Positions 36,085 through 62,530 of a DNA stretch of 64,000 nt are shown one piece after another; the stretch's first letter is position 1; every line of letters begins with the position of its first letter. Under the pieces are notes generated by a model that saw nothing but the letters and a program-made list of their open reading frames with translations, had not been told where the DNA came from and ran no database searches. The stretch is from contig NW_027364056.1 of the NCBI RefSeq assembly GCF_046119375.1, forward strand, positions 62,001 through 126,000, in the 5' to 3' direction. The DNA is from Phyllobates terribilis (taxonomy: Eukaryota). The position numbers and the translations under genes were made by a program.

Positions 36085-38520
36085 CGTGGATAGGAATTAT
36101 ACTCACACCGCGGCCGAACTGGTGGAATTACACTCAGACCATGGCCGGACTGGAGGAATTACACTCAGACCGCGGCCAGACTGGAGGAATCACACTCAGA
36201 CTGCGGCCAGACTGGTGGAATTACACTCAGACCATGGCCGGACTGGAGGAATCACACTCAGACCGCGGCCGGACTGGAGGAATTATACTCAGACCATGGC
36301 CGGACTGGAGGAATTATACTCAGACCGCGGCCAGACTGGAGGAATCACACTCAGACCGCGGCCGGACTGGAGGAATTACACTCAGACCGCGGCCGGACTG
36401 GAGGAATTATACTCAGACCGCGGCCAGACTGGAGGAATCACACTCAGACTGCGGCCAGACTGGAGGAATCACACTCAGACCGCGGCCAGACTGGTGGAAT
36501 TACACTCACACCGCGGCCGAACTGGTGGAATTACACTCAGACTGCGGCCGGACTGGAGGAATTACACTCAGACCGCGGCCGGACTGGAGGAATTACACTC
36601 AAACCGCGGCCGGACTGGAGGAATTACACTCAGACTGCGGCCGGACTGGAGGAATTACACTCAGACCGCGGCCGGACTGGAGGAATTACACTCAGACCGC
36701 GGCCGGACTGGAGGAATTACACTCAGACTGCGGCCAGACTGGAGGAATCACACTCAGACCGCGGCCAGACTGGAGGAATCACACTCAGACCGCGGCCGGA
36801 CTGGAGGAATCACACTCAGACCGCGGCCAGACTGGAGGAATTACACTCAGACCGCGGCCGGACTGGAGGAATTACACTCAAACCGCGGCCGGACTGGAGG
36901 AATTACACTCAGACCGCGGCCGGACTGGAGGAATTACACTCAAACCGCGGCCGGACTGGAGGAATTACACTCAGACTGCGGCCGGACTGGAGGAATTACA
37001 CTCAGACCGCGGCTGGACTGGAGGAATTACACTCAGACCGCGGCCAGACTGGTGGAATTACACTCAGACCGCGGCCAGACTGGAGGAATTACACTCAGAC
37101 TGCGGCCGGACTGGAGGAATTACACTCAGACCGCGGCCAGACTGGAGGAATTACACTCAGACCGCGGCCGGACTGGAGGAATTACACTCAAACCGCGGCC
37201 GGACTGGAGGAATTACACTCAGACCGCGGCCGGACTGGAGGAATTACACTCAAACCGCGGCCGGACTGGAGGAATTACACTCAGACTGCGGCCGGACTGG
37301 AGGAATTACACTCAGACCGCGGCCGGACTGGAGGAATTACACTCAGACCGCGGCCAGACTGGTGGAATTACACTCAGACCGCGGCCAGACTGGAGGAATT
37401 ACACTCAGACTGCGGCCGGACTGGAGGAATTACACTCAGACTGCGGCCAGACTGGAGGAATTACACTCAGACTGCGGCCAGACTGGAGGAATCACACTCA
37501 GACCGCGGCCGGACTGGAGGAATCACACTCAGACCGCGGCCGGACTGGAGGAATCACACTCAGACCGCAGCCAGACTGGAGGAATCACACTCAGACCGCG
37601 GCCAGACTGGTGGAATTACACTCAGACCGCGGCCAGACTGGAGGAATCACACTCAGACCGCGGCCAGACTGGAGGAATTACACTCAGACCGCGGCCAGAC
37701 TGGAGGAATTACACTCAGACTGCGGCCAGACTGGTGGAATTACACTCAGACTGCGGCCAGACTGGAGGAATCACACTCAGACCGCGGCCGGACTGGAGGA
37801 ATCACACTCAGACCGCGGCCGGACTGGAGGAATCACACTCAGACCGCGGCCAGACTGGAGGAATCACACTCAGACCGCGGCCGGACTGGAGGAATCACAC
37901 TCAGACCGCGGCCAGACTGGAGGAATTACACTCAGACCGCGGCCAGACTGGAGGAATTACACTCAGACTGCGGCTGGACTGGAGGAATTACACTCAGACC
38001 GCGGCCAGACTGGAGGAATTACACTCAGACTGCGGCCAGACTGGTGGAATTACACTCAGACTGCGGCCAGACTGGAGGAATCACACTCAGACCGCGGCCG
38101 GACTGGAGGAATCACACTCAGACCGCGGCCGGACTGGAGGAATCACACTCAGACCGCGGCCGGACTGGAGGAATCACACTCAGACCGCGGCCAGACTGGA
38201 GGAATTACACTCAGACCGCGAAAGAGATGGAGGAATCACACTCAGACCGCAGCCGGACTGGAGGAATTACACTCAGACCGCAGCCGGACTGGAGGAATCA
38301 CACTCAGACCGCGGCCGGACTGGAGGAATTACACTCAGACCGCGGCCAGACTGGTGGAATTACACTCAGACCGCGAAAGAGATGGAGGAATCACACTCAG
38401 ACCGCGGCCGGACTGGAGGAATTACACTCAGACCGCGGCCAGACTGGTGGAATTACACTCAGACCGCGAAAGAGATGGAGGAATCACACTCAGACCGCGG
38501 CCGGACTGGAGGAATTACAC
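36085..38520. repeat. GC/CpG-rich minisatellite, 31-bp unit GGAGGAATTACACTCAGACCGCGGCCGGACT, about 78 copies
   Basis: Unit read directly. The 31-aa period of the translations equals three 31-bp units. Confidence 0.98.
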
Positions 38521-38537
38521 TTAGGATGCAGACAGAT

Positions 38538-38543: not shown

Positions 38544-38590
38544 TACAATATTAAGCTGCGACATCCTGGTCATTGCCCATGAAGCGCGGG

Positions 38591-39410
38591 GCTCACATGA
38601 TAGGTGGAGTATGGACACCGGATGATGGGGTCATACAGACAGGATGGAGCTCATGTGATGGGTGGAGTATGGACACCGGATGATGGGGTCATACAGACAG
38701 GACGGTGCTCATGTGATGGGTGGAGTATGGACACCGGATGATGGGGTCATACAGACAGGATGGAGCTCACATGATAGGTGGAGTATGGACACTGGATGAT
38801 GGGGTCATACAGACAGGACGGAGCTCATGTGATGGGTGGAGTATGGACACTGGATGATGGGGTCATACAGACAGGACGGAGCTCATGTGATGGGTGGAGT
38901 ATGGACACCGGATGATGGGGTCATACAGACAGGACGGAGCTCACATGATAGGTGGAGTATGGACACCGGATGATGGGGTCATACAGACAGGACGGAGCTC
39001 ATGTGATGGGTGGAGTACGGACACTGGATGATGGGGTCATACAGACAGGACGGAGCTCATGTGATGGGTGGAGTATGGACACCGGATGATGGGGTCATAC
39101 AGACAGGACGGAGCTCATGTGATTGGTGGTGTATGGACACTGGATGATGGGGTCATACAGACAGGACGGAGCTCATGTGATGGGTGGAGTATGGACACTG
39201 GATGATGGGGTCATACAGACAGGACGGAGCTCATGTGATGGGTGGAGTACGGACACTGGATGATGGGGTAATACAGACAGGATGGAGCTCACGTGATGGG
39301 TGGAGTATGGACACTGGATGATGGGGTCATACAGACAGGACGGAGGTCAGATGATGGGTGGAGTATGGACACCGGATGATGGGGTCATACAGACAGGACG
39401 GGTCACATGT
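38591..39410. repeat. Minisatellite, 58-bp unit GCTCATGTGATGGGTGGAGTATGGACACCGGATGATGGGGTCATACAGACAGGACGGA, about 14 copies
   Basis: Units start at 38591 and 38649, giving a period of 58. The last copy decays near 39400. Confidence 0.97.
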
Positions 39411-39620: not shown

Positions 39621-40210
39621 TTATGACTCTGGGAAGAGCAGAAAGCCGGAGAATATAGTGTCTGCCCCTTCGGTGCCCAGCAGGTGGTTCTTCTCAGTGG
39701 GCTCCAGCCACACAGACTCATCCTTGCTGACCTTCAGAACAACGCTACCAGTGGTGGTCTGGAAGACGTTGAGGACCTGGTCACAGAAGAGGACCACCGT
39801 TTCCTTGTCACTGACGTTAGCGTTGGGGTTGAATCGGCCTTTGACGATGTGGATGCAGAGGTGTCCCCTGGACGAGGCGTGGTATGTGAAGTAGTAGAGG
39901 CCAGGGTACTTACAGGTGAACTTTCCAGTGCGGACATCATACTGATTACTTATGTTGATGATCTCTGTATCAAAGCGAATGGGCTGATCCTTTCGTGGAT
40001 TCCCCATCGTGGTCTTCTTCACTGAGAAAGCAGACTGCACCTCCGTCTTGTAGACTCCAGATTCTCCTTTTAGGCCTTTTAGACCTCTGGGTCCTGAATG
40101 ACCTGGAGGACCCGTTGGCCCTTTTGGCCCCACTTTTCCGGGGTTTCCGGGCTGACCCATATCTCCTCTGTATTCTTCTTCTTTCCAGTCAATGAAAGTT
40201 CCAGGAGGTC
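39621..40210 (-). CDS. C1QB: Complement C1q B chain, final coding exon (collagen tail and gC1q globular domain)
   Basis: Acceptor CTGCATCAG|GA with branch-like TCTAAT; phase 1; stop TAA at 39623-39621. The peptide contains [50 protein letters not shown] and [23 protein letters not shown]. These match B-chain-diagnostic motifs (human [37 protein letters not shown]) rather than A or C. Confidence 0.95.
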
Positions 40211-40280
40211 CTGATGCAGAGGAGACATTAGATCAGGAGGGGACGTCACCCCAGAATCCCGCCCTGCACCACTGACTTAC

Positions 40281-40443
40281 CCTGGTCTCCCTTCTCCCCA
40301 TTGCCTCCGTCCTGCCCATCAGCACCAGGCGTTCCAGGGATTCCCGGTAGCCCTGGCATTCGAGCTTGGCAGCTCTGCGACTGACATAAGGGAAGGGAGA
40401 GGATGATGATGCAGAAGAAGAAGGGCGCAGCTCCGGGGAACAT
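40281..40443 (-). CDS. C1QB: Complement C1q B chain, first coding exon (signal peptide, N-terminal Cys, start of collagen)
   Basis: Acceptor TTCTTCCAG|GTGGCAGCATG (exon starts 40451) and donor CAGG|GTAAGT. Encodes MFPGAAPFFFCIIILSLPLCQSQSCQARMPGLPGIPGTPGADGQDGGNGEKGDQ(G). 163 nt + 590 nt = 753 nt, or 250 aa plus stop, in frame. Confidence 0.93.

Positions 40444-40535: not shown

Positions 40536-40590
<55 letters not shown>
40536..40590. repeat. (TA)n microsatellite with short (GT)n tail
   Basis: Read directly. Confidence 0.97.
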
Positions 40591-40591
<1 letters not shown>

Positions 40592-40608
40592 AGTGTAAAC
40601 TCTATATA

Positions 40609-43600
40609 CAGGGGGATCTCAATAAATTAGAGTATCATCAAAAAGTGAATTTATTTCAATTCTTCAATACAAAAGTGAAGCTGCTATATTATATAGAGTC
40701 ATTACACACAGAGGGATCTATTATATAGAGTCATTACACACAGAGGGATCTATTATATAGAGTCATTACACACAGAGGGATCTATTATATAGAGTCATTA
40801 CACACAGAGGGATCTATTATATAGAGTCATTACACGCAGAGGGATCTATTATATAGAGTCATTACACACAGAGTGATCTATTATATAGAGTCATTACACA
40901 CAGAGGGATCTATTATATAGAGTCATTACACACAGAGTGATCTATTATATAGTCATTACAGACAGAGGGATCTATTATAGAGAGTCATTACACACAGAGT
41001 GATCTATTATATAGAGTCATTACACACAGAGGGATCTATTATATAGAGTCATTACACACAGAGTGATCTATTATATAGAGTCATTACACACAGAGTGATC
41101 TATTATATAGAGTCATTACACACAGAGGGATCTATTATATAGAGTCATTACACACAGAGTGATCTATTATATAGAGTCATTACACACAGAGTGATCTATT
41201 ATATAGAGTCATTACACACAGGGATCTATTATATAGAGTCATTACACACAGAGTGATCTATTATATAGAGTCATTACACGCAGAGGGATCTATTATATAC
41301 AGTCATTACACACAGAGGGATCTATTATATAGAGTCATTACACACAGAGTGATCTATTATATAGAGTCATTACACGCAGAGGGATCTATTATATACAGTC
41401 ATTACACACAGAGGGATCTATTATATAGAGTCATTACACAGAGTGATCTATTATATAGAGTCATTACACACAGGGATCTATTATATAGAGTCATTACACA
41501 CAGAGTGATCTATTATATAGAGTCATTACACGCAGAGGGATCTATTATATAGAGTCATTACACACAGAGTGATCTATTATATAGAGTCATTACAGACAGA
41601 AGGATCTATTATATAGAGTCATTACACACAGAGTGATCTATTATATAGAGTCATTACACGCAGAGGGATCTATTATATAGAGTCATTACACACAGAGTGA
41701 TCTATTATATAGAGTCATTACACACAGAGGGATCTATTATATAGAGTCATTACACGCAGAGGGATCTATTATATAGAGTCATTACACACAGTGATCTATT
41801 ATATAGAGTCATTATACACAGAGGGATCTATTATATAGAGTCATTACACACAGAGCGATCTATTATATTGCATCATTACACGCAGAGGGATCTATTATAT
41901 AGAGTCATTACACACAGAGGGATCTATTATATAGAGTCATTACACACAGAGTGATCTATTATATAGAGTCATTACACACAGAGTGATCTATTATATAGAG
42001 TCATTACACACAGAGTGATCTATTATATAGAGTAATTACACACAGGGATCTATTATATAGAGTCATTACACACAGAGTGATCTAATATATAGAGTCATTA
42101 CACGCAGAGGGATCTATTATATACAGTCATTACACACAGAGGGATCTATTATATAGAGTCATTACACACAGAGTGATCTATTATATAGAGTCATTACACA
42201 CAGGGATCTATTATATAGAGTCATTACACACAGAGTGATCTATTATATAGAGTCATTACACGCAGAGGGATCTATTATATAGAGTCATTACACACAGAGT
42301 GATCTATTATATAGAGTCATTACACACAGAGTGATCTATAATATAGAGTCATTACACACAGAGGGATCTATTCTATAGAGTAATTATACGCAGAGGGATC
42401 TATTATATAGAGTCATTACACACAGAGGGATCTATTATATAGAGTCATTACACACAGAGTGATCTATTATATAGAGTCATTACACACAGAGTGATCTATT
42501 ATATAGAGTCATTACACACAGGGATCTATTAAATAGAGTTATTACACACAGAGTGATCTATTATATAGAGTCATTACACACAGGGATCTATTATATAGAG
42601 TCATTGCACACAGAGTGATATATTATATAGAGTCATTACACGCAGAGGGATCTATTATATAGAGTCATTACACACAGAGTGATCTATTATATAGAGTCAT
42701 TACAGACAGAAGGATCTATTATATAGAGTCATTACACACAGAGTGATCTATTATATAGAGTCATTACACGCAGAGAGATCTATTATATAGAGTCATTACA
42801 CACAGAGTGATCTATTATATAGAGTCACTACACGCAGAGGGATCTATTATATAAAGTCATTACACACAGAGTGATCTATTATATAGAGTCATTACACACA
42901 GAGGGATCTATTATATAGAGTCATTACACGCAGAGGGATCTATTATATAGAGTCATTACACACAGAGTGATCTATTATATAGAGTCATTACACACAGAGG
43001 GATCTACTATATAGAGTCATTACACACAGAGGGATCTATTATATAGAGTCATTACACACAGAGCGATCTATTATATAGAGTCATTACACACAGAGTGATC
43101 TATTATATAGAGTCATTACACACAGTGATCTATTATATAGAGTCATTACAGACAGAGGGAGCTATTATATAGAGTCATTAAACGCAGAGGGATCTATTAT
43201 ATAGTCATTACACGCAGAAGGATCTATTATATAGAGTCATTACACACAGAGGGATCTATTATATAGAGTCATTACACACAGAGTGATCTACTATATAGAG
43301 TCATTACACACAGAGGGATCTATTATATAGACTCATTACAGAGAGGGATCTATTATATAGAGTCATTACACACAGAGGGATCTATTATATAGAGTCATTA
43401 CACACAGAAGGATCTATTATATAGAGTCATTACACGCAGAGGAATCTATTATATAGAGTCATTACACACAGAGGGATCTACTATATAGAGCCATTACACA
43501 CAGAGGAATCTATTATATAGAGTCATTACACACAGAGGGATCTATTATATAGAGTAATTACACACAGAGCGATCTATTATATAGAGTCATTACACACAGA

Positions 43601-46600
43601 GGGATCTATTATATAGAGTCATTACACACAGAGGGATCTATTATTATATAGAGTCATTACACACAGAGTGATCTATTATATAGAGTAATTACACACAGAG
43701 GGATCTATTATATAGAGTCATTACACACAGAGGGATCTATTATATTGAGTCATTACACACAGAGGGATCTATTATATAGAGACATTACACACAGAGGGAT
43801 CTATTATATAGAGTCATTACACGCAGAGGGATCTATTATATAGAGTCATTACACCCAGAGGGATCTATTATATAGAGTCATTACACAGAGAGGGATCTAT
43901 TATATAGAGTCATTACACGCAGAGGGATCTATTCTATAGAGTAATTACACACAGAGGGATCTATTATATAGAGTCATTACGCACAGAGGGATCTATTATA
44001 TAGAGTCATTACACACAGAGTGATCTATTATATAGAGTCATTACACACAGAGGGATCTACTATATAGAGTCATTACACGCAGAGGGATCTATTACATAGA
44101 GTCATTAGACACAGAGTGATCTATTATATAGAGTCATTACACACAGAGGGATCTATTATATAGAGTCATTACACACAGAGGGATCTATTATATAGAGTCA
44201 TTACACACAGAGCGATCTATTATATACAGTCATTACACACAGAGGGATCTATTATATAGAGTCATTACACACAGTGATCTATTATATAGAGTCATTACAC
44301 ACAGAGGGATCTATTATATAGAGTCATTACACACAGAGGGATCTATTATATAGAGTCATTACAGACAGAGGGAGCTATTATATAGAGTCATTACACACAG
44401 AGGGATCTATTATATAGAGTCATTACACACAGAGGGATCTATTATATAGACTCATTACACAGAGGGATCTATTATATAGAGTCATTACACACAGAGGGAT
44501 CTATTATATAGAGTCATTACACACAGAAGGATCTATTATATAGAGTCATTACACGCAGAGGAATCTATTATATAGAGTCATTACACACAGAGGGATCTAC
44601 TATATAGAGCCATTACACACAGAGGAATCTATTATATAGAGTCATTACACACAGAGGGATCTATTATATAGAGTCATTACACACAGAGCGATCTATTATA
44701 TAGAGTCATTACACACAGAGGGATCTATTATATAGAGTCATTACACACAGAGGGATCTATTATTATATAGAGTCATTACACACAGAGTGATCTATTATAT
44801 AGAGTAATTACACACAGAGGGATCTATTATATAGAGTCATTACACACAGAGGGATCTATAATATAGAGTCATTACACACAGAGGGATCTATTATATAGAG
44901 ACATTACACACAGAGGGATCTATTATATAGAGTCATTACACGCAGAGGGATCTATTATATAGAGTCATTACACCCAGAGGGATCTATTATATAGAGTCAT
45001 TACACAGAGAGGGATCTATTATATAGAGTCATTACACGCAGAGGGATCTATTCTATAGAGTAATTATACGCAGAGGGATCTATTATATAGAGTCATTACA
45101 CACAGAGGGATCTATTATATAGAGTCATTACACACAGAGGGATCTATTATATAGAGACATTACACACAGAGCGATCTATTATATAGAGTCATTACACACA
45201 GAGGGATCTATTATATAGAGTCATTACACACAGAGGGATCTATTATATAGAGTCATTACACACAGAGGGATCTATTATATAGAGTCATTACACACAGAGG
45301 GATCTATTATATATAGTCATTACACACAGAGGGATCTATTATATAGAGTCATTACACACAGAGTGATCTATTATATAGAGTCATTACACACAGGGATCTA
45401 TTAAATAGAGTTATTACACACAGAGTGATCTATTATATAGAGTCATTACACGCAGAGGGATCTATTATATACAGTCATTACACACAGAGGGATCTATTAT
45501 ATAGAGTCATTACACACAGAGTGATCTATTATATAGAGTCATTACACACAGGGATCTATTATATAGAGTCATTGCACACAGAGTGATATATTATATAGAG
45601 TCATTACACGCAGAGGGATCTATTATATAGAGTCATTACAGACAGAAGGATCTATTATATAGAGTCATTACACACAGAGGGATCTATTATATAGAGTCAT
45701 TACACACAGAGGGATCTATTACATATAGTCATTACACACAGAGGGATCTATTATATAGAGTCATTACACACAGAGTGATCTATTATATAGAGTCATTACA
45801 CACAGGGATCTATTAAATAGAGTTATTACACACAGAGTGATCTATTATATAGAGTCATTACACGCAGAGGGATCTATTATATACAGTCATTACACACAGA
45901 GGGATCTATTATATAGAGTCATTACACACAGAGTGATCTATTATATAGAGTCATTACACACAGGGATCTATTATATAGAGTCATTGCACACAGAGTGATA
46001 TATTATATAGAGTCATTACACGCAGAGGGATCTATTATATAGAGTCATTACAGACAGAAGGATCTATTATATAGAGTCATTACACACAGAGTGATCTATT
46101 ATATAGAGTCATTACACGCAGAGAGATCTATTATATAGAGTCATTACACACAGAGTGATCTATTATATAGAGTCATTACACACAGAGGGATCTATTATAT
46201 AGAGTCATTACACACAGAGCGATCTACAATATAGAGTCATTACACACAGAGCGATCTATTATATAGAGTCATTACACACAGAGGGATCTATTATATACAG
46301 TCATTACACGCAGAGGGATCTATTATATAGAGTCATTACACACAGAGGGATCTATTATATAGAGTCATTACACACAGAGGGATCTATTATATAGAGTCAT
46401 TACACACAGAGGGATCTATTATATAGAGTCATTACACGCAGAGGGATCTATTATATAGAGTCATTACAGACAGAAGGATCTATTATATAGAGTCATTACA
46501 CACAGAGTGATCTATTATATAGAGTCATTACACGCAGAGAGATCTATTATATAGAGTCATTACACACAGAGTGATCTATTATATAGAGTCATTACACGCA

Positions 46601-49600
46601 GAGGGATCTATTATATAGAGTCATTACACACAGAGTGATCTATTATATAGAGTCATTACACACAGAGTGATCTATTATATAGAGTCATTACATGCAGAGA
46701 GATCTATTATATAGAGTCATTACACACAGAGTGATCTATTATATAGAGTCATTACACGCAGAGGGATCTATTATATAGAGTCATTACACACAGAGTGATA
46801 TATTATATAGAGTCATTACACACAGAGGGATCTATTATATAGAGTCATTACACACAGAGTGATCTATTATATAGAGTCATTACACAGAGGGATCTATTAT
46901 ATAGAGTCATTACACACAGAGGGATCTATTATATAGAGTCATTACACACAGAGCGATCTATTATATAGAGTCATTACACACAGAGGGATCTATTATATAG
47001 AGTCATTACACACAGTGATCTATTATATAGAGTCATTACAGACAGAGGGAGCTATTATATAGAGTCATTACACACAGAGGGATCTATTATATACAGTCAT
47101 TACACACAGAGGGATCTATTATATAGACTTATTACACAGAGGGATCTATTATATAGAGTCATTACACACAGAGGGATCTATTATATAGAGTCATTACACA
47201 CAGAAGGATCTATTATATAGAGTCATTACACGCAGAGGAATCTATTATATAGAGTCATTACACACAGAGGGATCTACTATATAGAGCCATTACACACAGA
47301 GGAATCTATTATATAGAGTCATTACACACAGAGCAATCTATTATATAGAGTCATTACACACAGAGGGATCTATTATATAGAGTCATTACACACAGAGGGA
47401 TCTATTATTATATAGAGTCATTACACACAGAGTGATCTATTATATAGAGTAATTACACACAGAGGGATCTATTATATAGAGTCATTACACACAGAGGGAT
47501 CTATTATATAGAGTCATTACACACAGAGGGATCTATTATATAGAGACATTACACACAGAGGGATCTATTATATAGAGTCATTACACGCAGAGGGATCTAT
47601 TATATAGAGTCATTACACCCAGAGGGATCTATTATATAGAGTCATTACACAGAGAGGAATCTATTCTATAGAGGCATTACACGCAGAGGGATCTATTCTA
47701 TGGAGTAATTACACACAGAGGGATCTATTATATAGAGTCATTACGCACAGAGGGATCTATTATATAGAGTCATTACACACAGAGTGATCTACTATATAGA
47801 GTCATTACACACAGAGGGATCTATTATATAGAGTCATTACACGCAGAGGGATCTATTATATAGAGTCATTACACACAGAGTGATCTATTATATAGAGTCA
47901 TTACACACAGAGGGATCTATTATATAGAGTCATTACACACAGAGGGATCTATTATATAGAGTCATTACACACAGAGCGATCTATTATATAGAGTCATTAC
48001 ACACAGAGGGATCTATTATATAGAGTCATTACACACAGTGATCTATTACATAGAGTCATTACACACAGAGGGATCTATTATATAGAGTCATTACACACAG
48101 AGGGATCTATTATATAGAGTCATTACAGACAGAGGGAGCTATTATATAGAGTCATTACACACAGAGGGATCTATTATATAGAGTCATTACACACAGAGGG
48201 ATCTATTATATAGACTCATTACACAGAGGGATCTATTATATAGAGTCATTACACACAGAGGGATCTATTATATAGAGTCATTACACACAGAAGGATCTAT
48301 TATATAGAGTCATTACACGCAGAGGAATCTATTATATAGAGTCATTACACACAGAGGGATCTATTATATAGAGTCATTACACACAGAGGGATCTACTATA
48401 TAGAGCCATTACACACAGAGGAATCTATTATATAGAGTCATTACACACAGAGGGATCTATTATATAGAGTCATTACACACAGAGCGATCTATTATATAGA
48501 GTCATTACACACAGAGGGATCTATTATATAGAGTCATTACACACAGAGGGATCTATTATTATATAGAGTCATTACACACAGAGTGATCTATTATATAGAG
48601 TAATTACACACAGAGGGATCTATTATATAGAGTCATTACACACAGAGGGATCTATTATATAGAGTCATTACACACAGAGGGATCTATTATATAGAGACAT
48701 TACACACAGAGGGATCTATTATATAGAGTCATTACACGCAGAGGGATCTATTATATAGAGTCATTACACCCAGAGGGATCTATTATATAGAGTCATTACA
48801 CAGAGAGGGATCTATTCTATAGAGTCATTACACGCAGAGGGATCTATTCTATAGAGTCATTACACGCAGAGGGATCTATTATATAGAGTCATTACACACA
48901 GAGGGATCTATTATATAGAGTCATTACACACAGAGGGATCTATTATATAGAGTCATTACACACAGAGGGATCTATTATATAGAGTCATTACACACAGAGC
49001 GATCTATTATATAGAGTCATTACACACAGAGGGATCTATTATATAGAGTCATTACACACAGAGGGATCTATTATATAGAGTCATTAGACACAGAGGGATC
49101 TATTATATAGAGTCATTACACACAGAGGGATCTATTATATATAGTCATTACACACAGAGGGATCTATTATATAGAGTCATTACACACAGAGGGATCTATT
49201 ATATAGAGTCATTACACACAGAGGGATCTATTATATATAGTCATTACACACAGAGGGATCTATTATATAGAGTCATTACACGCAGAGGAATCTATTATAT
49301 AGAGTCATTACACACAGAGGGATCCATTATATAGAGTCATTACACGCAGAGGGATCTATTATATAGAGTCATTACACGCAGAGGGATCTATTATATAGAG
49401 TCATTACACGCAAGGGATCTATTATATAGAGTCATTACACGCAGAGGGATCTATTATATAGAGTCATTACACGCAGAGGGATCTATTATATAGAGTCATT
49501 ACACGCAGAGGGATCTATTCTATAGAGTCATTACACGCAGAGGGATCTATTCTATAGAGTCATTACACGCAGAGGGATCTATTCTATGGAGTCATTACAC

Positions 49601-52600
49601 GCAGAGGGATCTATTCTATAGAGTCATTACACACAGAGGGATCTATTATATAGAGTCATTACACGCAGAGGGATCTATTCTATAGAGTCATTACACGCAG
49701 AGGGATCTATTCTATAGAGTCATTACACACAGAGGGATCTATTATATAGAGTCATTCCACACAGAGGGGTCTATTATATAGAGTCATTCCACACAGAGGG
49801 ATCTATTATATAGAGTCATTCCACACAGAGGGATCTATTATATAGAGTCATTCCACACAGAGGGATCTATTATATAGAGTCATTCCACACAGAGGGATCT
49901 ATTATATAGAGTCATTCCACGCAGCGCGATCTATTATATAGAGTCATTACACACAGAGGGATCTATTATATAGAATCATTCCACGCAGCGCGATCTATTA
50001 TATAGAGTCATTACACACAGAGGGATCCATTATATAGAGCCATTACACACAGAGGGATCTATTATAAAGAGTCATTCCACGCAGCGCGATCTATTATATA
50101 GAGTCGTTACACGCAGAGGGATCTATTATATAGAGTCATTACACGCAGAGGGATCTATTCTATAGAGTCACTACACGCAGAGGGATCTATTCTATAGAGT
50201 CATTACACGCAGAGGGATCTATTATATAGAGTCATAACACGCAGAGGGATCTATTATATAGAGTCATTACACGCAGAGGGATCTATTATATAGAGTCATT
50301 ACACGCAGAGGGATCTATTATATAGAGTCATTACAGGCAGAGGGATCTATTATATAGAGTCATTACACGCAGAGGGATCTATTATATAGAGTCATTACAC
50401 GCAGAGGGATCTATTATATAGAGTCATTACACGCAGAGGGATCCATTATATAGAGTCATTACAAGCAGAGGGATCCATTATACAGAGTCATTACACGCAG
50501 AGGGATCTATTATATAGAGTCATTACACGCAGAGGGATCTATTATATAGAGTCATTACATGCAGAGGGATCTATTATATAGAGTCATTACACACAGAGGG
50601 ATCTATTATATAGAGTCATTACACACAGAGGGATCTATTATATAGAGTCATTACACACAGAGGGATCTAAAATATAGAGTCATTACACACACAGAGGGAT
50701 CTATTATATAGAGTCATTACACACAGAGGGATCTATTATATAGAGTCATTACACGCAGAGGGATCTATTATATAGAGTCATTCCACACAGAGGGATCTAT
50801 TATATAGAGTCATTCCACGCAGAGGGATCTATTATATAGAGTCATTCCACACAGAGGGATCTATTATATAGAGTCATTCCACACAGAGGGATCTATTATA
50901 TAGAGTCATTCCACGCAGAGGGATCTATTATATAGAGTCATTCCACACAGAGGGATCTATTATATAGAGTCATTCCACGCAGAGGGATCTATTATATAGA
51001 GTCATTCCACACAGAGGGATCTATTATATAGAGTCATTCCACACAGAGGGATCTATTATATAGAGTCATTCCACACAGAGGGATCTATTATATAGAGTCA
51101 TTCCACACAGAGGGATCTATTATATAGAGTCATTCCACACAGAGGAATCTATCATATAGAGTCATTCCACACAGAGGGATCTATTATATAGAGTCATTCC
51201 ACGCAGCGCGATCTATTATATAGAGTCATTACACACAGAGGGATCTATTATATAAAGCCATTACACACAGAGGGATCTATTATAAAGTGTCATTACACTC
51301 ACAGGGATCTATTATATAGAGCCATTACACGCAGAGGGATCTATTATGTAGAGTCATTACACACAGAGGGATCTATTATATAGAGTCATTACACACAGTG
51401 ATCTATTATATAGAGTCATTACAGACAGAAGGAGCTATTATATAGAGTCATTACACACAGAGGGATCTATTATATAGAGTCATTACACACAGAGGGATCT
51501 ATTATATAGACTCATTACACAGAGGGATCTATTATATAGAGTCATTACACACAGAGGGATCTATTATATAGAGTCATTACACACAGAGGGATCTATTATA
51601 TAGAGTCATTACTCGCAGAGGAATCTATTATATAGAGTCATTACACACAGAGGGATCTACTATATAGAGCCATTACACACAGAGGAATCTATTATATAGA
51701 GTAATTACACACAGAGGGATCTATTATAAAGAGTCATTACACACAGAGCGATCTATTATATAGAGTCATTACACACAGAGGGATCTATTATATAGAGTCA
51801 TTACACACAGAGGGATCTATTATATAGAGTCATTACACACAGAGGGATCTACTATATATAGTCATTACACACAGAGGGATCTATTATATAGAGTCTTACA
51901 CACAGAGGGATCTATTATATAGAGACATTACACGCAGAGGGATCTATTATATAGAGTCATTACACACAGAGGGATCTATTATATATAGTCATTACACACA
52001 GAGGGATCTATTATATAGAGTCATTACACGCAGAGGGATCTATTATATAGAGTCATTACAGGCAGAGGGATCTATTATATAGAGTCATTACAGGCAGAGG
52101 GATATATTATGTAGAGTCATTACACGCAGAGGGATCTATTATATAGAGTCATTACACGCAGAGGGATCTATTCTATAGAGTCATTACACGCAGAGGGATC
52201 TATTCTATAGAGTCATTACACGCAGAGGGATCTATTCTATAGAGTCATTACTCGCAGAGGGATCTATTCTATAGAGTCATTACACGCAGAGGGATCTATT
52301 CTATAGAGTCATTACACGCAGAGGGATCTATTCTATAGAGGCATTACACGCAAAGGGATCTATTATATAGAGTCATTCCACACAGAGGGATCTATTATAT
52401 AGAGTCATTCCACACAGAGGGGTCTATTATAAAGAGTCATTCCACACAGAGGGATCTATTATATAGAGTCATTACACACAGAGGGATCTATTATATAGAG
52501 TCATTCCACACAGAGGGATCTATTATATAGAGTCATTCCACGCAGAGGGATCTATTATATAGAGTCATTCCACACAGAGGGATCTATTATATAGAGTCAT

Positions 52601-55600
52601 TCCACACAGTGATCTATTATATAGAGTCATTACACACAGAGCCATCTATTATATAGAGTCATTACACACAGAGCGATCTATTATATAGAGTCATTACACA
52701 CAGAGGGATCTATTATATAGAATCATTCCACGCAGCGCGATCTATTATATAGAGTCATTATACACAGAGGGATCTATTATATAGAGTCATTACACACAGA
52801 GGGATCTATTATATAGAGTCATTACACACAGAGTGATCTATTATATAGTGTCATTACACACAGAGGGATCTATTATATAGAGTCATTACACACAGAGCGA
52901 TCTATTATATAGAGTCATTACACACTGAGTGATCTATTATATAGAGTCATTACACACAGAGTGATCTATTATATAGTGTCATTATACACAGAGGGATCTA
53001 TTATATAGAGTCATTACACACAGAGGGATCTATTATATAGAGTCATTACACACAGAGGGATCTATTATATAGAGTCATTACAGGCAGAGGGATCTATTAT
53101 ATAGAGTCATTACAGGCAGAGGGATCTATTATATAGAGTCATTACACACAAAGGGATCTATTATATAGAGTCATTACACACAGAGGGATCTATTATATAG
53201 AGTCATTACAGGCAGAGGGATCTATTATATAGAGTCATTACACACAGAGGGATCTATTATATAGAGTCATTCCACACAGAGGGATCTATTATATAGAGTC
53301 ATTCCATGCAGAGGGATCTATTATATAGAGTCATTCCACACAGAGGGATCTATTATATAGAGTCATTCCACACAGAGGGATCTATTATATAGAGTCATTC
53401 CACACAGAGGGATCTATTATATAGAGTCATTCCACACAGAGGGATCTATTATATAGAGTCATTCCACACAGAGGGATCTATTATATAGAGTCATTCCACA
53501 CAGAGGGATCTATTATATAGAGTCATTCCACACAGAGGGATCTATTATATAGAGTCATTCCACGCAGCGCGATCTATTATATAGAGTCATTACACACAGA
53601 GGGATCTATTATATAAAGCCATTACACACAGAGGGATCTATTATAAAGAGTCATTACACTCACAGGGATCTATTATATAGAGCCATTACGCGCAGAGGGA
53701 ACTATTATATAGAGTCATTACACACAGAGGGATCTATTATATAGAGTCATTACACACAGTGATCTATTATATATAGTCATTACACACTGAGGGATCTATT
53801 ATATAGAGTCATTACACACAGAGGGATCTATTATATAGACTCATTACACAGAGCGATCTATTATATAGACTCATTACACAGAGGGATCTATTATATAGAG
53901 TCATTACACACAGAGGGATCTATTATATAGAGTCATTACACACAGAGGGATCTATTATATAGAGTCATTACTCGCAGAGGAATCTATTATATAGAGTCAT
54001 TACACACAGAGGGATCTACTATATAGATCCATTACACACAGAGGAATCTATTATATAGAGTAATTACACACAGAGGGATCTATTATAAAGAGTCATTACA
54101 CACAGAGCGATCTATTATATAGAGTCATTACACACAGAGGGATCTATTATATAGAGTCATTACACACAGAGGGATCTATTATATAGAGTCATTACACACA
54201 GAGGGATCTACTATATATAGTCATTACACACAGAGGGATCTATTATATAGAGTCTTACACACAGAGGGATCTATTATGTAGAGACATTACACGCAGAGGG
54301 ATCTATTATATAGAGTCATTACACACAGAGGGATCTATTATATATAGTCATTACACACAGAGGGATCTATTATATAGAGTCATTACACGCAGAGGGATCT
54401 ATTATATAGAGTCATTACAGGCAGAGGGATCTATTATATAGAGTCATTACAGGCAGAGGGATCTATTATATAGAGTCATTACACGCAGAGGGATCTATTC
54501 TATAGAGTCATTACACGCAGAGGGATCTATTCTATAGAGTCATTACACGCAGAGGGATCTATTCTATAGAGTCATTACACGCAGAGGGATCTATTCTATA
54601 GAGTCATTACTCGCAGAGGGATCTATTCTATAGAGTCATTACACGCAGAGGGATCTATTCTATAGAGTCATTACACGCAGAGGGATCTATTCTATAGAGT
54701 CATTACACGCAGAGGGATCTATTATATAGAGTCATTCCACACAGAGGGATCTATTATATAGAGTCATTCCACACAGAGGGGTCTATTATATAGAGTCATT
54801 CCACACAGAGGGATCTATTATATAGAGTCATTACACACAGAGGGATCTATTATATAGAGTCATTCCACACAGAGGGATCTATTATATAGAGTCATTCCAC
54901 ACAGAGGGATCTATTATATAGAGTCATTCCACGCAGAGGGATCTATTATATCGAGTCATTACACACAGAGGGATCTATAATATAGAGTCATTACACACAG
55001 AGTGATCTATTATATAGAGTCATTACACACAGAGCCATCTATTATATAGAGTCATTACACACAGAGGGATCTATTATATAGAATCATTCCACGCAGCGCG
55101 ATCTATTATATAGTGTCATTATACACAGAGGGATCTATTATATAGAGTCATTACACACAGAGGGATCTATTATATAGAGTCATTACACACAGAGTGATCT
55201 ATTATATAGTGTCATTACACACAGAGGGATCTATTATATAGAGTCATTACACACAGAGCGATCTATTATATAGAGTCATTACACACTGAGTGATCTATTA
55301 TATAGAGTCATTACACACAGAGTGATCTATTATATAGTGTCATTATACACAGAGGGATCTATTATATAGAGTCATTACACACAGAGGGATCTATTATATA
55401 GAGTCATTACACACAGAGGGATCTATTATATAGAGTCATTACAGGCAGAGGGATCTATTATATAGAGTCATTACAGGCAGAGGGATCTATTATATAGAGT
55501 CATTACACACAGAGGGATCTATTATATAGAGTCATTACACACAGAGGGATCTATTATATAGAGTCATTACAGGCAGAGGGATCTATTATATAGAGTCATT

Positions 55601-57660
55601 ACACACAGAGGGATCTATTATATAGAGTCATTACACACAGAGGGATCTATTATATAGAGTCATTACACGCAGAGGGATCTATTATATAGAGTCATTACAG
55701 GCAGAGGAATCTATTATATAGAGTCATTACACACAGAGGGATCTATTATATAGAGTCATTACACACAGAGGGATCTATTATATAGAGTCATTACACACAG
55801 AGGGATCTATTATATAGAGTCATTACACACAGAGGGATCTATTATATAGAGTCATTACACACAGAGGGATCTATTATATAGAGTCATTACACACAGAGGG
55901 ATCTATTATATAGAGTCATTACACACAGAGGGATCTATTCTATAGAGTCATTACACGCAGAGGGATGTATTCTATAGAGTCATTACACGCAGAGGGATCT
56001 ATTATATAGAGTCATTCCACACAGAGGGATCTATTATATAGAGTCATTCCACACAGAGGGGTCTATTATATAGAGTCATTCCACACAGAGGGATCTATTA
56101 TATAGAGTCATTACACACAGAGGGATCTATTATATAGAGTCATTCCACACAGAGGGATCTATTATATAGAGTCATTCCACACAGAGGGATCTATTATATA
56201 GAGTCATTCCACGCAGAGGGATCTATTATATAGAGTCATTACACACAGAGGGATCTATAATATAGAGTCATTACAAACAGAGTGATCTATTATATAGAGT
56301 CATTACACACAGAGCCATCTATTATATAGAGTCATTACACACAGAGCGATCTATTATATAGAGTCATTACACACAGAGGGATCTATTATATAGAGTCATT
56401 ACACACAGAGGGATCTATTATATAGAGTCATTACACACAGAGGGATCTATTATATAGAATCATTCCACGCAGCGCGATCTATTATATAGAGTCATTATAC
56501 ACAGAGGGATCTATTATATAGAGTCATTACACACAGAGGGATCTATTATATAGAGTCATTACACACAGAGTGATCTATTATATAGTGTCATTACACACAG
56601 AGGGATCTATTATATAGAGTCATTACACACAGAGCGATCTATTATATAGAGTCATTACACACTGAGTGATCTATTATATAGAGTCATTACACAGAGGGAT
56701 CTATTATATAGAGTCATTACACACAGAGGGATCTATTATATAGAGTCATTACAGGCAGAGGGATCTATTATATAGAGTCATTACAGGCAGAGGGATCTAT
56801 TATATAGAGTCATTACACACAGAGGGATCTATTATATAGAGTCATTACACACAGAGGGATCTATTATATAGAGTCATTACAGGCAGAGGGATCTATTATA
56901 TAGAGTCATTACACACAGAGGGATCTATTATATAGAGTCATTACAGGCAGAGGGATCTATTATATAGAGTCATTACAGGCAGAGGGATCTATTATATAGA
57001 GTCATTACACCCAGAGGGATCTATTATATAGAGTCATTACACACAGAGGGATCTATTATATAGAGTCATTACACACAGAGGGATCTATTATATAGAGTCA
57101 TTACACACAGAGGGATCTATTATATAGAGTCATTACACACAGAGGGATCTATTATATAGAGTCATTACACACAGAGCGATCTATTATATAGAGTCATTAC
57201 ACACAGAGGGATCTATTATATAGAGTCATTACACACAGAGCGATCTATTATATAGAGTCATTACACACAGAGGGATCTATTATATAGAGTCATTACACAC
57301 AGAGGGATCTATTATATAGAGTCATTACACACAGAGAGATCTATTATATAGAGTCATTACACACAGAGGGATCTATTATATAGAGTCATTACACACAGAG
57401 GGATCTATTATATAGAGTCATTACACACAGAGGGATCTATTATATAGAGTCATTACACACAGAGAGATCTATTATATAGAGTCATTACACACAGAGCGAT
57501 CTATTATATAGAGTCATTACACACAGAGGGATCTATTTCAGCCATTGAAAACACAAAAGTCATTATCTCAGTAAATTAGAATACTTTATAACAACAGGTT
57601 TGATTGTGGAGCCTACTGAAACAGACTAAGGGACTTTTGCAGGTGTTTTTTGTTAATTAT
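40609..57660 (-). mobile_element. Degenerate, internally deleted Tc1/mariner (IR/DR type) remnant whose terminal repeat is split by the 32-bp satellite
   Basis: TA followed by CAGGGGGATCTCAATAAATTAGAGTATC at 40607-40636. A second copy of the same core, ATTATCTCAGTAAATTAGAATAC, lies at about 57562-57584. The reverse complement of 57600-57660 (AAAACACCTGCAAA...TCAGTAGGCTCCACAATCA) resembles the sequence just upstream of the transposase ATG in fish/frog Tc1-like elements (from recall). No transposase and no opposite TIR were seen. Confidence 0.7.
40688..57535. repeat. AT-rich satellite, 32-bp unit TATTATATAGAGTCATTACACACAGAGGGATC, about 525 copies (16.8 kb)
   Basis: GAGGGATC recurs at 40711 and 40743. 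There are frequent 30-bp (CA-deletion) variants and diagnostic substitutions. Confidence 0.99.
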
Positions 57661-57990
57661 GAAAAATAATAACAATAATCTTCATCGATAATGAAAAAAA
57701 TAGTCATTTTTAATGTGTTTTTTTTTTTTAAATAATAAAGATCACAAACCAGCAAAAAGTGTTTTTTTTTTCAGAAGAAGCCAGAGAGAGAAAATGCTCC
57801 AAAACCGCAGAGTTCAGCAGAGTCTTCAGAGCTCAGAGAGCGGAGACCTCATGGAGTCACATCCACTCTGCTTGGACATTTAGACCTTGTTCACATGTAG
57901 CGTAAATGCCGCGTGTTTTTTGTGGCTTCTCTTGCACAAAATTCTGCTGTTTAACTGTCTAAGCAAAGGGGATGTGATTTCATGAGAAGG

Positions 57991-58004
57991 GCGCCCCCTG
58001 TGGT
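57991..58004 (-). promoter_or_regulatory. Weak CTCF-like motif (ACCACAGGGGGCGC)
   Basis: The core AGGGGGCGC is present but the 5' half matches imperfectly. It lies in the unique island between two satellites. Confidence 0.3.
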
Positions 58005-58689
58005 CTGAAAACGCCGGTGAACGCTGCGGTTTTGGTGCTTTTTTCTCTCTCGTCTTCTTGTGGAGCCTAAAAAAAAAAACGCAGGTAAAAAACTGCAGAA
58101 ACTTTATTAAGAATCAAAGCTTTTCTGTATATAAAAAACACATTAAAAAGGCGTCTTCACATCTGCACCAGAATCGCATCAAATAAGGGAGAAGATGGTT
58201 ATTGTGGAGTCTGGTGCGGATCCTGCAGTATTTCTGCACCGTGTGAACACGGCCACAGACGCCGGATGTCGTATAGTGACGCCACATAGAGATGAGAAAG
58301 ATCTGGCGGCTCCGACTGCGAATGAAGGAGAAAGAAATAATCCGAGAGATGAGCCGGACGCACAGAGGACGTCGCTGCGGCCCGGGGGGATCAGCAGCCG
58401 CCGGGGGCTCCGGGAGGTGAGAGATTCACGGCCTACGTCCACCCGCCGGGGACCAGAGACCCAGGAACCATCCGCCCGTCTCTAGACTCATCTGTCCTGG
58501 ACACAGTGGACAGTCCTGGATTCTACGCCCTGCAGTCTCGAGCGTCTGCTGTGTGTCCCTCACTGCTAGCGCCCCTCTGACAACTCCTCCTGCCAGGCGC
58601 ATGGCCAAAAGTTACCACGGGCGCAATACACACGCCACATGATCTGACCCTCTTTCTTTTCTTCAAAATTTGGGCGGTCTGACACAGCA

Positions 58690-61600
58690 CCCACTAGACA
58701 CACACTAGACACACATGCACAGAACACACACTAGACACACATGCACAGAACACACACTAGACACACATGCACAGAACACACACTGGACACACATGCACAG
58801 AACACACACTGGACACACATGCACAGCACACACACTAGACACACATGCACAGAACACACACTGGACACACATGCACAGCACACACACTGGACACACATGC
58901 ACAGCACACACACTAGACACACATGCACAGAACACACACTAGACACACATGCACAGCACACACACTAGACACACATGCACAGCATACACAGGACACACAT
59001 TAGACGCACATGCACAGCACACACACTAGACACACATGCACAGCATACACAGGGCACACACTAGACACACATGCACAGCACACACACATGCACAGAACAC
59101 ACACTAGACACACATGCACAGCACACACACATGCACAGCACACACACTAGACACACATACTCAGGACACACATTAGACGCACATGCACAGCACACACACT
59201 AGACACACATGCACAGCATACACAGGGCACACACTAGACACACATGCACAGCACACACACATGCACAGCACACACACTAGACACACATACTCAGGACACA
59301 CATTAGACACACATGCACAGAACACACACTAGACACACATGCACAGCATACACAGGACACACATTAGACGCACATGCACAGCACACACACTAGACACACA
59401 TGCACAGCACACACAGGGCACACACTAGACACACATGCACAGCATACACACATGCACAGCACACACACTAGACACACATGCACAGCATACACAGGGCACA
59501 CACTAGACACACATGCACAGCACACACACATGCACAGCACACACACTAGACACACATGCACAGCATACACAGGACACACACTAGACGCACATGCACAGCA
59601 CACACACTAGACACACATGCACAGCATACACAGGGCACACACTAGACACACATGCACAGCACACACACATGCACAGAACACACACTAGACACACATGCAC
59701 AGCATACACAGGACACACATTAGACGCACATGCACAGCACACACACTAGACACACATGCACAGCACACACAGGGCACACACTAGACACACATGCACAGCA
59801 CACACATGCACATCATACACAGGACACACATTAGACACACATGCACAGCACACACACTAGACACACATGCACAGCATACACAGGACACACACTAGACACA
59901 CATGCACAGCACACACACTAGACACACATGCACAGCACACACAGGACACACACTAGACACACACTAGACACACATGCACAGCACACACACATGCACAGCA
60001 TACACAGGACACACATTAGACGCACATGCACAGCACACACACTAGACACACATGCACAGCATACACAGGACACACACTAGACACACATGCACAGCACACA
60101 CACTAGACACACATGCACAGCACACACAGGACACACACTAGACACACACTAGACACACATGCACAGCACACACACTAGACACACATGCACAGCAGACACA
60201 GGACACACACTAGACACACATGCACAGCACACACACTAGACACACATGCACAGCACACACACTAGACACACATGCACAGCACACACAGGACACACACTAG
60301 ACACACATGCACAGCACACACACTAGACACACATGCACAGCACACACACTAGACACACATGCACAGCAAACACAGCACACACACTAAACACACATGCACA
60401 GCACACACACCAGACACATGCACAGCATACACAGGACACACACTAGACACACATGCACAGCACACACTAGACACACATGCACAGCACACACTAGACACAC
60501 ATGCACAGCATGCACACTAGACACACATGCACAGCATACACAGGACACACACTAGACACACATGCACAGCACACACACTAGACACACATGCACAGCATAA
60601 ACAGGGCACACACTAGACACACATGCACAGCACACACACATGCACAGCATACACAGGACACACATGCACAGAACACACACTAGACACACATGCACAGAAC
60701 ACACACATGCACAGCATACACAGGACACACATGCACAGAACACACACTAGACACACATGCACAGAACACACACTAGACACACATGCACAGCACACACACT
60801 AGACACACATACACAGCACACACACTGGACACACATGCACAGCACACACACTAGACACACATGCACAGCATACACAGGGCACACACTAGACACACATGCA
60901 CAGCACACACACTAGACACACATGCACAGCATACACAGGGCACACACTAGACACACATGCACAGCACACACACATGCACAGCATACACAGGGCACACATT
61001 AGACGCACATGCACAGCACACACACATGCATAGCACACACACTAGACACACATGCACAGCATACACAGGACACACACTAGACACACAGGCACAGCACACA
61101 CACTAGACACACATGCACAGCACACACAGGACACACACTAGACACACACTAGACACACATGCACAGCACACACACTAGACACACATGCACAGCACACACA
61201 GGACACACACTAGACACACATGCACAGCACACACACTAGACACACATGCACAGCACACACACTAGACACACATGCACAGCAAACACAGCACACACACTAA
61301 ACACACATGTACAGCACACACACCAGACACATGCACAGCATACACAGGACACACACTAGACACACATGCACAGCACACACTAGACACACATGCACAGCAC
61401 ACACTAGACACACATGCACAGCATGCACACTAGACACACATGCACAGCATACACAGGACACACACTAGACACACATGCACAGCACACACACATGCACAGC
61501 ATACACAGGACACACATGCACAGCACACACACTAGACACACATGCACAGCATACACAGGACTCACACTAGACACACATGCACAGCACACACATATGCACA

Positions 61601-62530
61601 GCATACACACTAGACACACATGCACAGCATACACAGGACTCACACTAGACACACATGCACAGCACACACATATGCACAGCATACACAGGACACACATTAG
61701 ACACACATGCACAGCACACACACATGCACAGCACACACACTAGACACACATGCACAGCATACACAGGACACACACTAGACACAAGCATGCACAGCACACA
61801 CACTAGACACACATGCACAGCACACACAGGACACACACTAAACACACATGCACAGCACACACAGTAGACACACATGCACAGCACACACACTAGACACACA
61901 TTCTCAGCAGACACAGCACACACACATTCTCAGCACGCACAGCACACACATTAGACACACATGCACAGCACACACACTAGACACCCATGCACAGCATACA
62001 CAGGACACACACTAGATACACATGCACAGCACACACACTAGACACCCATGCACAGCATACACAGGACACACACTAGATACACATGCACAGCACACACACT
62101 AGACACACATGCACAGCACACACAGGACACACACTAGACACACATGCACAGCAAACACAGGACACACACTAGACACACATGCACAGGACACACACTAGAC
62201 ACACATGCACAGCACACACAGGACACACACTAGACACACATGCACAGCACACACACTAGACACACATGTCACATGCACAGCACACACACTAGACACACAT
62301 TCTCAGCAGACACAGCACACACATTAGACACACATTCTCAGCACACACATTAGACACACATTCACAGCACACACATTAGACACACATGCACAGCACACAC
62401 ATTAGACATACATTCACAGCACACACACATTCACAGCACACACATTAGACACACATGCACAGCACACACATTAGACACACATGCACAACACACACATTAG
62501 ACACACATGCACAGCATACACACACACTAG
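58690..62530. repeat. CA-rich compound minisatellite, ~26-bp base unit ACACACACTAGACACACATGCACAGC with modular variants
   Basis: Read directly. Modules CTAGACACAC, ATGCACAGC and ATACACAGG are combined in varying order. Confidence 0.97.

What the first reader, a model, noticed from the sequence alone, without database searches (positions are those of the whole stretch)
40607..57660. 16.8-kb satellite born inside a Tc1/mariner IR/DR terminal repeat
The left flank is TA plus a TIR start with the core ATCTCAATAAATTAGAGTAT, running straight into the first 32-bp unit. The right flank leaves the last unit (GATCTATTTCAGCC...) and reaches a second core, ATCTCAGTAAATTAGAATAC, then an inverted piece resembling a pre-transposase leader. 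This fits the outer/inner direct-repeat design of IR/DR Tc1 elements, with ~525 copies of a spacer segment amplified between the two transposase-binding repeats. It would be a directly readable case of a satellite originating from a DNA transposon, inside the putative first intron of an immune gene.
Basis: partly seen in the sequence, partly recalled or inferred. Interest (0 to 1): 0.7.

Follow-up and report, generated by a model that had tools for sequence, protein, structure and literature searches.

The report
Tandem array grown inside Tc1 end
A dead Tc1-type jumping gene just upstream of a frog complement C1q B-chain gene has had one 32-base piece of its terminal repeat copied 528 times in a row (16.85 kb); the origin is easy to read, but this is an ordinary example of repeat DNA arising from a transposon, and this genome seems to hold many more.

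Summary
Observation confirmed. A 32-bp x 528 tandem array (40687-57533, 96% like its consensus) lies between two direct copies of a 20-bp core (40616, 57565).

Reading supported, with refinements. With the array collapsed to one unit, the flanks align colinearly (85-88%, E 3e-32) to an unexpanded terminal repeat on an unrelated metagenome contig. That repeat holds the 32-mer once (28/32). Contigs from three frog species show the same single-unit form.

The same contigs show that 57601-57660 is the inverted leader that runs up to a transposase start (MGKTADLTDV). So the copy lies on the minus strand. The array sits in its 3' terminal repeat. The ORF is deleted from the start codon to 14 bp before the inner repeat, and the 5' terminal repeat is missing. 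Next to the array, 39 bp of spacer are also lost.

Repeated multi-unit variant blocks point to growth by unequal exchange. Summed contig depth suggests the 32-mer is several hundred times more abundant in this genome than this locus explains, so this is one array of a family-wide phenomenon, not a unique birthplace. Earlier notes of this scan describe similar Tc1-born arrays elsewhere in this genome.

The neighbouring gene is a C1q B-chain homologue. Whether the array lies in its first intron is untested, and the array length is not confirmed by long reads.

Known kind (Tetris, Xstir, miDNA4). Interest is low to moderate.

The parts
40605..40606 (.). TA target dinucleotide next to the preserved terminus, at the edge of a (TA)n microsatellite (40536-40582 by TRF)
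   Evidence: Homology to L001 starts at the shared TATACAGG.
40607..40635 (-). Element terminus (TACAGGGGG) plus the outer direct-repeat core at 40616-40635
40636..40686 (-). IR spacer between the outer core and the amplified segment
   Evidence: Colinear with L001 4522-4573. Matches the loose-end consensus before 57502 in X9 and X13.
40687..57533 (-). Array of 528 units of 32 bp. Each unit begins with TATT, and TATT also follows the last unit.
57534..57564 (-). Rest of the IR spacer. 39 bp present in other copies are missing between 57540 and 57541, with a CA microhomology at the junction.
   Evidence: Loose ends behind 57540 and before 57539 in all four runs. 39-column gap against L001.
57565..57584 (-). 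Inner direct-repeat core, 17/20 identical to the outer core
57585..57597 (-). Last bases of the element's 3' UTR. They are shared only with copies that continue into 3'-type sequence, which marks this as the 3' IR.
   Evidence: Loose ends behind 57597, compared with those behind 57583
57598..57600 (-). 3-nt filler (GTT on the + strand) at the internal-deletion junction
   Evidence: Lies between the two loose-end boundaries at 57597 and 57601
57601..57660 (-). 5' leader of the transposase gene, up to the A of the ATG. About 20 bp are missing after 57638. Homology to other copies and contig depth both end near 57660, so the 5' IR is absent.
   Evidence: Loose ends before 57601 and behind 57638, plus the depth table. 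No other IR piece in the window.
39621..40443 (-). Neighbouring gene, a complement C1q B-chain homologue. The ATG exon runs from 40443 downwards (signal peptide plus Gly-X-Y). The collagen plus C1q exon is at 39621-40160.

Best explanation
This is a dead copy of an abundant IR/DR-type Tc1-like DNA transposon. It lies on the minus strand, and its preserved terminus sits about 160 bp 5' of the start codon of a C1q B-chain gene. The copy lost its transposase ORF through an internal deletion that runs from the second base of the ATG to 14 bp before the 3' inner repeat. It also lost its whole 5' terminal repeat.

In the remaining 3' terminal repeat, a 32-bp piece of the spacer between the outer and inner transposase-binding repeats grew to 528 head-to-tail copies (16.85 kb). 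This pushed the two repeats from about 170 bp to 16.9 kb apart.

Shown here: the unit is a single-copy, colinear part of the unexpanded terminal repeat in unrelated DNA and in other copies in related frogs; the orientation and the deletions; and the block-wise internal duplications.

Inferred: the first duplication arose by slippage or misalignment between the two TATT tetranucleotides that lie 32 bp apart. Later growth came from unequal exchange or replication restart in registers of many units. The array has no function of its own. It is one of many such expansions of this terminal-repeat segment in this genome.
For: - Array anatomy.
- Colinear alignment of the collapsed IR to L001, at 143/162 identical columns. 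By blastn, positions 1-121 match L001 4491-4612 (85%, E 3e-32) and 120-164 match 4650-4694 (84%, E 2e-8). The unit homologue is at L001 4574-4605 (28/32). The L001 cores are 174 bp apart.
- Loose-end consensuses from other copies in four runs of three species:
  - single-unit form, with spacer sequence directly before 57502, in X9 and X13;
  - the 39 bp missing here, in all four runs;
  - two classes of continuation behind the inner core, leader-type behind 57583 and 3'-type behind 57597, of which the window shares the 3'-type bases;
  - the sequence before 57601 is the reverse complement of ATG GGG AAG ACT GCT GAC TTG ACA GAT GTC;
  - opposite-strand joints between 57581-57583 and 57638.
- Depth falls about 100-fold at about 57653.
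- Exact internal repeats of 250-397 bp at lags of 412-3796 bp, and recurring variant strings.
- Tc1 elements with close relatives in fish are among the most abundant repeats of poison frogs (PMC6278860, PMC11152451).
Against: - No transposase ORF of this family was fetched, so assignment to Tc1 rests on the end structure, the TA target, 10 codons and abundance.
- Only one terminus is present, so the TA duplication and the inverted pairing cannot be checked in this copy.
- The array length is not validated by spanning reads.
- In-situ growth cannot be separated from arrival with a shorter array already present.
- The depth-based abundance comes from summed contig depths, which the tool itself says are not copy numbers.
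Confidence: 0.85

Rival explanations
1. The array was not grown here. The element, or an ancestor copy, already carried an expanded terminal repeat and brought a sizeable array with it by transposition, as a mobile, foldback-like satellite carrier.
For: Summed contig depth over the unit is 5-9 million in X1 and X5, against about 20 for unique contigs and 2.6 million for the adjacent spacer bin. That implies many arrays elsewhere. Earlier notes of this scan (s1-218010, s1-218061; unchecked) describe Tc1 copies with the same-sized piece expanded in both terminal repeats.
Against: The block-wise duplications inside this array show that much growth was local. This copy's deletion junctions look private, because most other copies diverge at 57597-57601 and a unique-depth contig covers 57609-57715. 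From general knowledge of Sleeping Beauty-type elements, both repeats of an IR act together, so a 16.9-kb separation is unlikely to be mobile. A short starting array cannot be excluded.
Confidence: 0.2
2. The order of events is the reverse: a pre-existing 32-bp satellite was captured by, or interrupted by, Tc1 sequence, so the resemblance to the terminal repeat is secondary.
For: [quoted passage not shown]
Against: The unit is a single, colinear part of the terminal repeat in L001, an unrelated contig about 85% alike, and in single-unit copies in species B and C. Both array junctions are in register with that repeat. In species C the unit bins are far less deep than the spacer bins.
Confidence: 0.03
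3. The array length or its continuity is an assembly artefact, for example a much shorter array, or two Tc1 fragments joined through a collapsed repeat.
For: No spanning read evidence could be obtained, because all runs on offer were k-mer contigs. The window is about 80% tandem arrays, which is hard to assemble.
Against: There are 113 unit variants in a non-periodic order with long-range block structure and no N, unlike a simple assembler loop. Both flanks belong to the same IR, in the same orientation and in register.
Confidence: 0.1

Closest known systems
miDNA4, a Tc1/mariner MITE of Xenopus tropicalis that carries and drives a satellite (Scalvenzi and Pollet 2014, as summarised in PMC12628747 and PMC9659126)
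   Same: It is a frog Tc1/mariner-derived non-autonomous element. Its internal monomer occurs once or as arrays of variable length, and short AT-rich direct repeats flank the monomer. Here TATT flanks the unit.
   Different: In miDNA4 the repeat is central in a short MITE and was proposed to be captured. Here the unit is a native piece of the IR spacer between the two direct repeats of a full-size IR/DR Tc1 family, and this copy is a broken fragment with a 16.85-kb array.
Tetris foldback transposon and the TIR-220 satellite of Drosophila virilis (PMC4079207)
   Same: Tandem repeats arise within the terminal inverted repeats of a DNA transposon and expand into satellite-scale arrays.
   Different: Different superfamily and host, and a monomer of about 220 bp. 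Tetris arrays also exist free of the element, which was not tested here.
Xstir satellite derived from the Xmix MITE of Xenopus laevis (Hikosaka and Kawahara 2004, via PMC12628747 and PMC9659126)
   Same: An amphibian tandem repeat derived from MITE/TIR sequence, with MITE, composite and array forms coexisting.
   Different: The mechanism proposed there is stem-loop excision between adjacent elements. Here one IR holds the array, and the junctions point to microhomology slippage followed by unequal exchange.
Sleeping Beauty-type IR/DR Tc1-like elements of fish and frogs (general knowledge)
   Same: TA target, a terminal repeat of about 200 bp with an outer and an inner copy of a transposase-binding core about 170 bp apart, and a leader before the ATG.
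   Different: This is a different sequence family. No transposase sequence beyond 10 codons was seen here, and binding of the cores was not tested.

Membership tests
Tc1/mariner superfamily, IR/DR-type Tc1-like element | TA target-site duplication at both termini | tested here: inconclusive
   TA precedes the one preserved terminus here (40605-40606) and in L001. The other terminus of this copy is missing.
Tc1/mariner superfamily, IR/DR-type Tc1-like element | Terminal repeat with an outer and an inner direct copy of a short core, about 160-180 bp apart | tested here: met
   Cores at 40616 and 57565, 17/20 identical, with 0.01 such matches expected by chance. The collapsed spacing is 134 bp, or about 173 bp with the 39 bp lost. 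L001 cores are at 4502 and 4676.
Tc1/mariner superfamily, IR/DR-type Tc1-like element | The same repeat at both ends in inverted orientation | tested here: inconclusive
   Not present in this copy. At family level, two classes of continuation behind the inner core and opposite-strand joints fit a left and a right IR, but no complete element was read.
Tc1/mariner superfamily, IR/DR-type Tc1-like element | DDE (DD34E) transposase ORF between the repeats | not testable with these tools
   The ORF is deleted in this copy. Other copies start MGKTADLTDV. No Pfam transposase hit in 16 window ORFs. Collection scans gave no full element.
Transposon-derived satellite or minisatellite (TIR-derived) | The monomer is homologous to a single-copy segment of the parent element | tested here: met
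   L001 4574-4605 matches 28/32 and occurs once. Single-unit copies exist in species B and C.
Transposon-derived satellite or minisatellite (TIR-derived) | Array junctions are in register and colinear with the parent element on both sides | tested here: met
Transposon-derived satellite or minisatellite (TIR-derived) | Arrays at many loci or free of the element (a true genome-wide satellite) | tested here: inconclusive
   Summed contig depth over the unit far exceeds what 528 copies would give, but the tool warns that this is not a copy number. No other locus was read.

The most novel reading that the evidence does not exclude
This 32-bp spacer segment may be a recurrent, family-wide expansion hotspot of one Tc1 family. 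It would have expanded independently in many copies, in either terminal repeat, and so built a multi-megabase satellite in this frog lineage after its split from species C. The expansion might be promoted by something specific to the terminal repeat, such as transposase-bound repeats or repair after excision, rather than by generic slippage.
Probability: 0.15. Interest if true: 0.5.

Novelty: new member of a known kind. Interest (0 to 1): 0.3.

Why it matters
This is a clean, fully readable example of a tandem array still embedded in its parent transposon. The unexpanded state is documented in other copies and other species, so it could illustrate how terminal-repeat segments seed satellites in giant amphibian genomes. 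If the rough depth figures hold, this one Tc1 segment contributes megabases of satellite in this species, which bears on genome-size growth in poison frogs. The array also puts 17 kb of AT-rich repeat directly 5' of the coding exons of a complement gene, though no effect on that gene was shown. The mechanism and the kind are already described in other animals, frogs included.

Tried and rejected
- Scanned viral contigs for the outer core and for the start of the ORF: no matches.
- Scanned bacterial and archaeal genomes for the outer core: one hit (L002). It lies inside an ordinary bacterial coding region with no similarity beyond the 22-mer, so it is a chance match and was discarded.
- The metagenome scan gave one true relative, L001, but the contig ends at the inner core, so it has no transposase.
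- A full-text paper search for the core sequence found nothing.
- Pfam scans of 16 window ORFs found no transposase to use as a protein query.
- I checked whether the 23-kb 33-bp array at the window's left end abuts a Tc1 coding remnant. Its flank (23433-23700) shows none.
- A look-up of earlier findings by sequence returned nothing.
- I did not type a transposase from memory into any search, and I did not build a consensus of the element.

Full report
**Observation**

Tandem Repeats Finder reports a 32-bp array at 40687-57537, with 528.1 copies and 93% matches. My own unit-by-unit parse gives 528 units from 40687 to 57533. Of these, 490 are 32 bp long and 30 are 30 bp long. There are 113 distinct variants, 148 units are identical to the consensus, and the mean is 1.14 mismatches per 32-bp unit, or 96.4% identity. 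The window contains no N.

The left flank reads TA, then TACAGGGGG, then the 20-bp core at 40616-40635. A second copy of the core, with 3 mismatches and in the same orientation, lies at 57565-57584. Dinucleotide-preserving shuffles of the window give 0.01 such matches on average.

**Is it a transposon terminal repeat, and is the unit part of it?**

A scan of metagenome contigs for the outer core returned one locus, L001. At 4492-4696 it reads TA, TACAGGTGC, the outer core, a spacer, and a second core at 4676, where the contig ends.

I collapsed the window's array to one unit and aligned it to this stretch:

- The global alignment has 143 identical of 162 aligned columns, with one 39-column gap.
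- By blastn, positions 1-121 match L001 4491-4612 (85%, E 3e-32), and positions 120-164 match 4650-4694 (84%, E 2e-8).
- The 32-mer has exactly one homologue in L001, at 4574-4605 (28/32), at the colinear position.

**Evidence from the species itself and its relatives**

Public runs that hold the unique flank belong to one species (A) and, at low share, to two others (B and C). All are kept as k-mer contigs. I laid four runs on 57438-58700 at 85% likeness. Thousands of contigs from other copies aligned, and their loose-end consensuses are informative:

1. Before 57502, contigs of species B and C carry the left spacer sequence (ending ...AAAAAGTGAAACTCATA) directly in front of one unit. This is the unexpanded form.
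2. Behind 57540 and before 57539, all four runs carry about 39 bp that this copy lacks, with a CA microhomology at the junction. This matches the gap against L001. The deletion lies 7 bp from the array's end.
3. Behind the inner core there are two classes of continuation:
   - One class leaves at 57583 and runs into ATTAACAAAAAACACCTGCAAAGG....
   - The other class shares the window's next 14 bases and leaves at 57597.
4. Before 57601, the other copies read the reverse complement of ...CACAATC ATG GGG AAG ACT GCT GAC TTG ACA GAT GTC. This is a leader followed by an ORF that starts MGKTADLTDV.
5. Behind 57638, this copy lacks about 20 bp of that leader.
6. Contigs join 57581-57583 to 57638 on opposite strands.
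7. Depth falls about 100-fold near 57653-57660. A contig at unique depth covers 57609-57715.

**Structure**

Taken together, the element lies on the minus strand. Read in its own direction, it runs as follows:

- The 5' IR is absent.
- The leader is 57660 down to 57601, ending at the A of the ATG.
- A 3-nt filler follows (57600-57598).
- Then come the last 13 bases of the 3' UTR (57597-57585).
- The 3' IR follows: inner core (57584-57565), shortened spacer (57564-57534), the array (57533-40687), spacer (40686-40636), outer core (40635-40616) and terminus (40615-40607).
- The TA target is last.

It is not inverted relative to the element. The whole ORF has been deleted, so the leader now abuts the 3' IR.

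No other fragment of the IR, and no other copy of the 32-mer with up to 6 mismatches, occurs elsewhere in the window.

**How it grew**

- The unit starts with TATT, and TATT also follows the last unit. In the unexpanded form, two TATT therefore lie 32 bp apart. I infer that slippage or misalignment between them produced the first duplication.
- Later growth was in large registers. Strings of unit variants recur as blocks, and exact repeats of 250-397 bp occur at lags of 412, 1151, 2361 and about 3750 bp. This is the signature of unequal exchange or replication restart within an array.
- These are generic mechanisms. Nothing here shows that transposase was involved.

**Not a unique birthplace**

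In run X1, the window's own perfectly matching contigs have depth 14-24. The summed depth over the unit bins is 5.3-9.0 million, against 2.6 million for the adjacent spacer bin and 1.15 million for the inner-core bin. X5, another individual, is similar.

In species B the unit bins are 1.3-1.8 times the spacer bin. In species C they are far below it.

The tool warns that such sums are not copy numbers, so I use them only for order of magnitude. A locus with 528 units at 20-fold coverage would give about 10,000, so this locus explains well under 1% of the signal.

Earlier notes of this scan, which I did not check, report several Tc1-born arrays elsewhere in this genome. Two of them describe copies with a piece expanded in both terminal repeats: s1-218010, for which a follow-up gives the piece as 32 bases, and s1-218061. 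The scan has thus met this kind of thing before on other DNA of this genome.

**Context**

On the minus strand, 39621-40160 encodes a collagen stretch and a C1q domain (Pfam E 5e-31). The best solved relatives are C1q B chains, at E 2e-44, against 1e-27 for C chains and 3e-19 for A chains.

The ATG at 40443 opens a signal peptide followed by Gly-X-Y repeats. An acceptor-like ttcttccag lies just 5' of the ATG. The transposon terminus is about 160 bp 5' of the ATG.

The array is therefore in a 5'-UTR intron or in upstream DNA. No RNA data were available to decide between the two.

About 80% of the window is tandem arrays of six kinds.

**Comparison with what is known**

Satellites and minisatellites that arise from terminal repeats or internal pieces of DNA transposons are well described: Tetris in Drosophila virilis (PMC4079207), Xstir/Xmix and the Tc1/mariner MITE miDNA4 in Xenopus (reviews PMC12628747 and PMC9659126).

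Tc1 elements are among the most abundant repeats of poison frogs, and many have close relatives in fish (PMC6278860, PMC11152451). That fits the 85-88% match to L001, whose host organism I did not identify.

Assignment of this element to the Tc1 family rests on four things: the TA target, the two-core terminal repeat, abundance, and ten codons. No full transposase was obtained.

**Verdict**

This is a new member of a known kind. Its interest is as a clear illustration, and as a pointer to a possibly large Tc1-derived satellite in this genome.

Noticed in passing
window 1-23432: A 33-bp array of about 743 copies runs off the left end of the window. It ends in a block of a shorter, 25-bp variant (23178-23432, listed by TRF as period 75). 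Because 33 = 11 codons, one minus-strand frame stays open and yields dozens of spurious ORFs. Its inner flank shows no Tc1 coding remnant.
   Followed up: partly
window 31382-35176, 36092-38521, 38587-39401, 58698-62523: Four further arrays (37 bp x 104, 31 bp x 78, 58 bp x 14, and a CA-rich 26 bp x 150) surround the C1q gene. Tandem arrays make up about 80% of the 64 kb. Their origins were not examined.
   Followed up: no
window 39621-40443 (-): Complement C1q B-chain homologue in two coding exons: signal peptide plus collagen start, then collagen plus the C1q globular domain. The short intron between them was not mapped exactly.
   Followed up: partly
window 57791-58043: MITE-like inverted repeat (95-nt arms, 76% complementary, 63 nt apart) directly beside the truncated Tc1. 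Contig depth marks it as a moderately repeated family in all three frog species.
   Followed up: no
window 26250-27356 (+): The ORF that another note calls cold-shock-like gives only a sub-threshold Pfam CSD hit (E 0.002, 18.3 bits against a cutoff of 27).
   Followed up: partly
L001 2700-3880: The metagenome contig that carries the unexpanded Tc1 end also holds a long ORF that looks like a reverse transcriptase of a non-LTR retrotransposon just upstream, so the contig is eukaryotic host DNA. The organism was not identified.
   Followed up: no
window 57497 (unit position 28): The T variant at this unit position (GAGTGATC) is the majority in species B contigs and agrees with L001, so it may be the ancestral state. 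In this array, G dominates (387 of 490 units) and T units cluster in the left third.
   Followed up: partly
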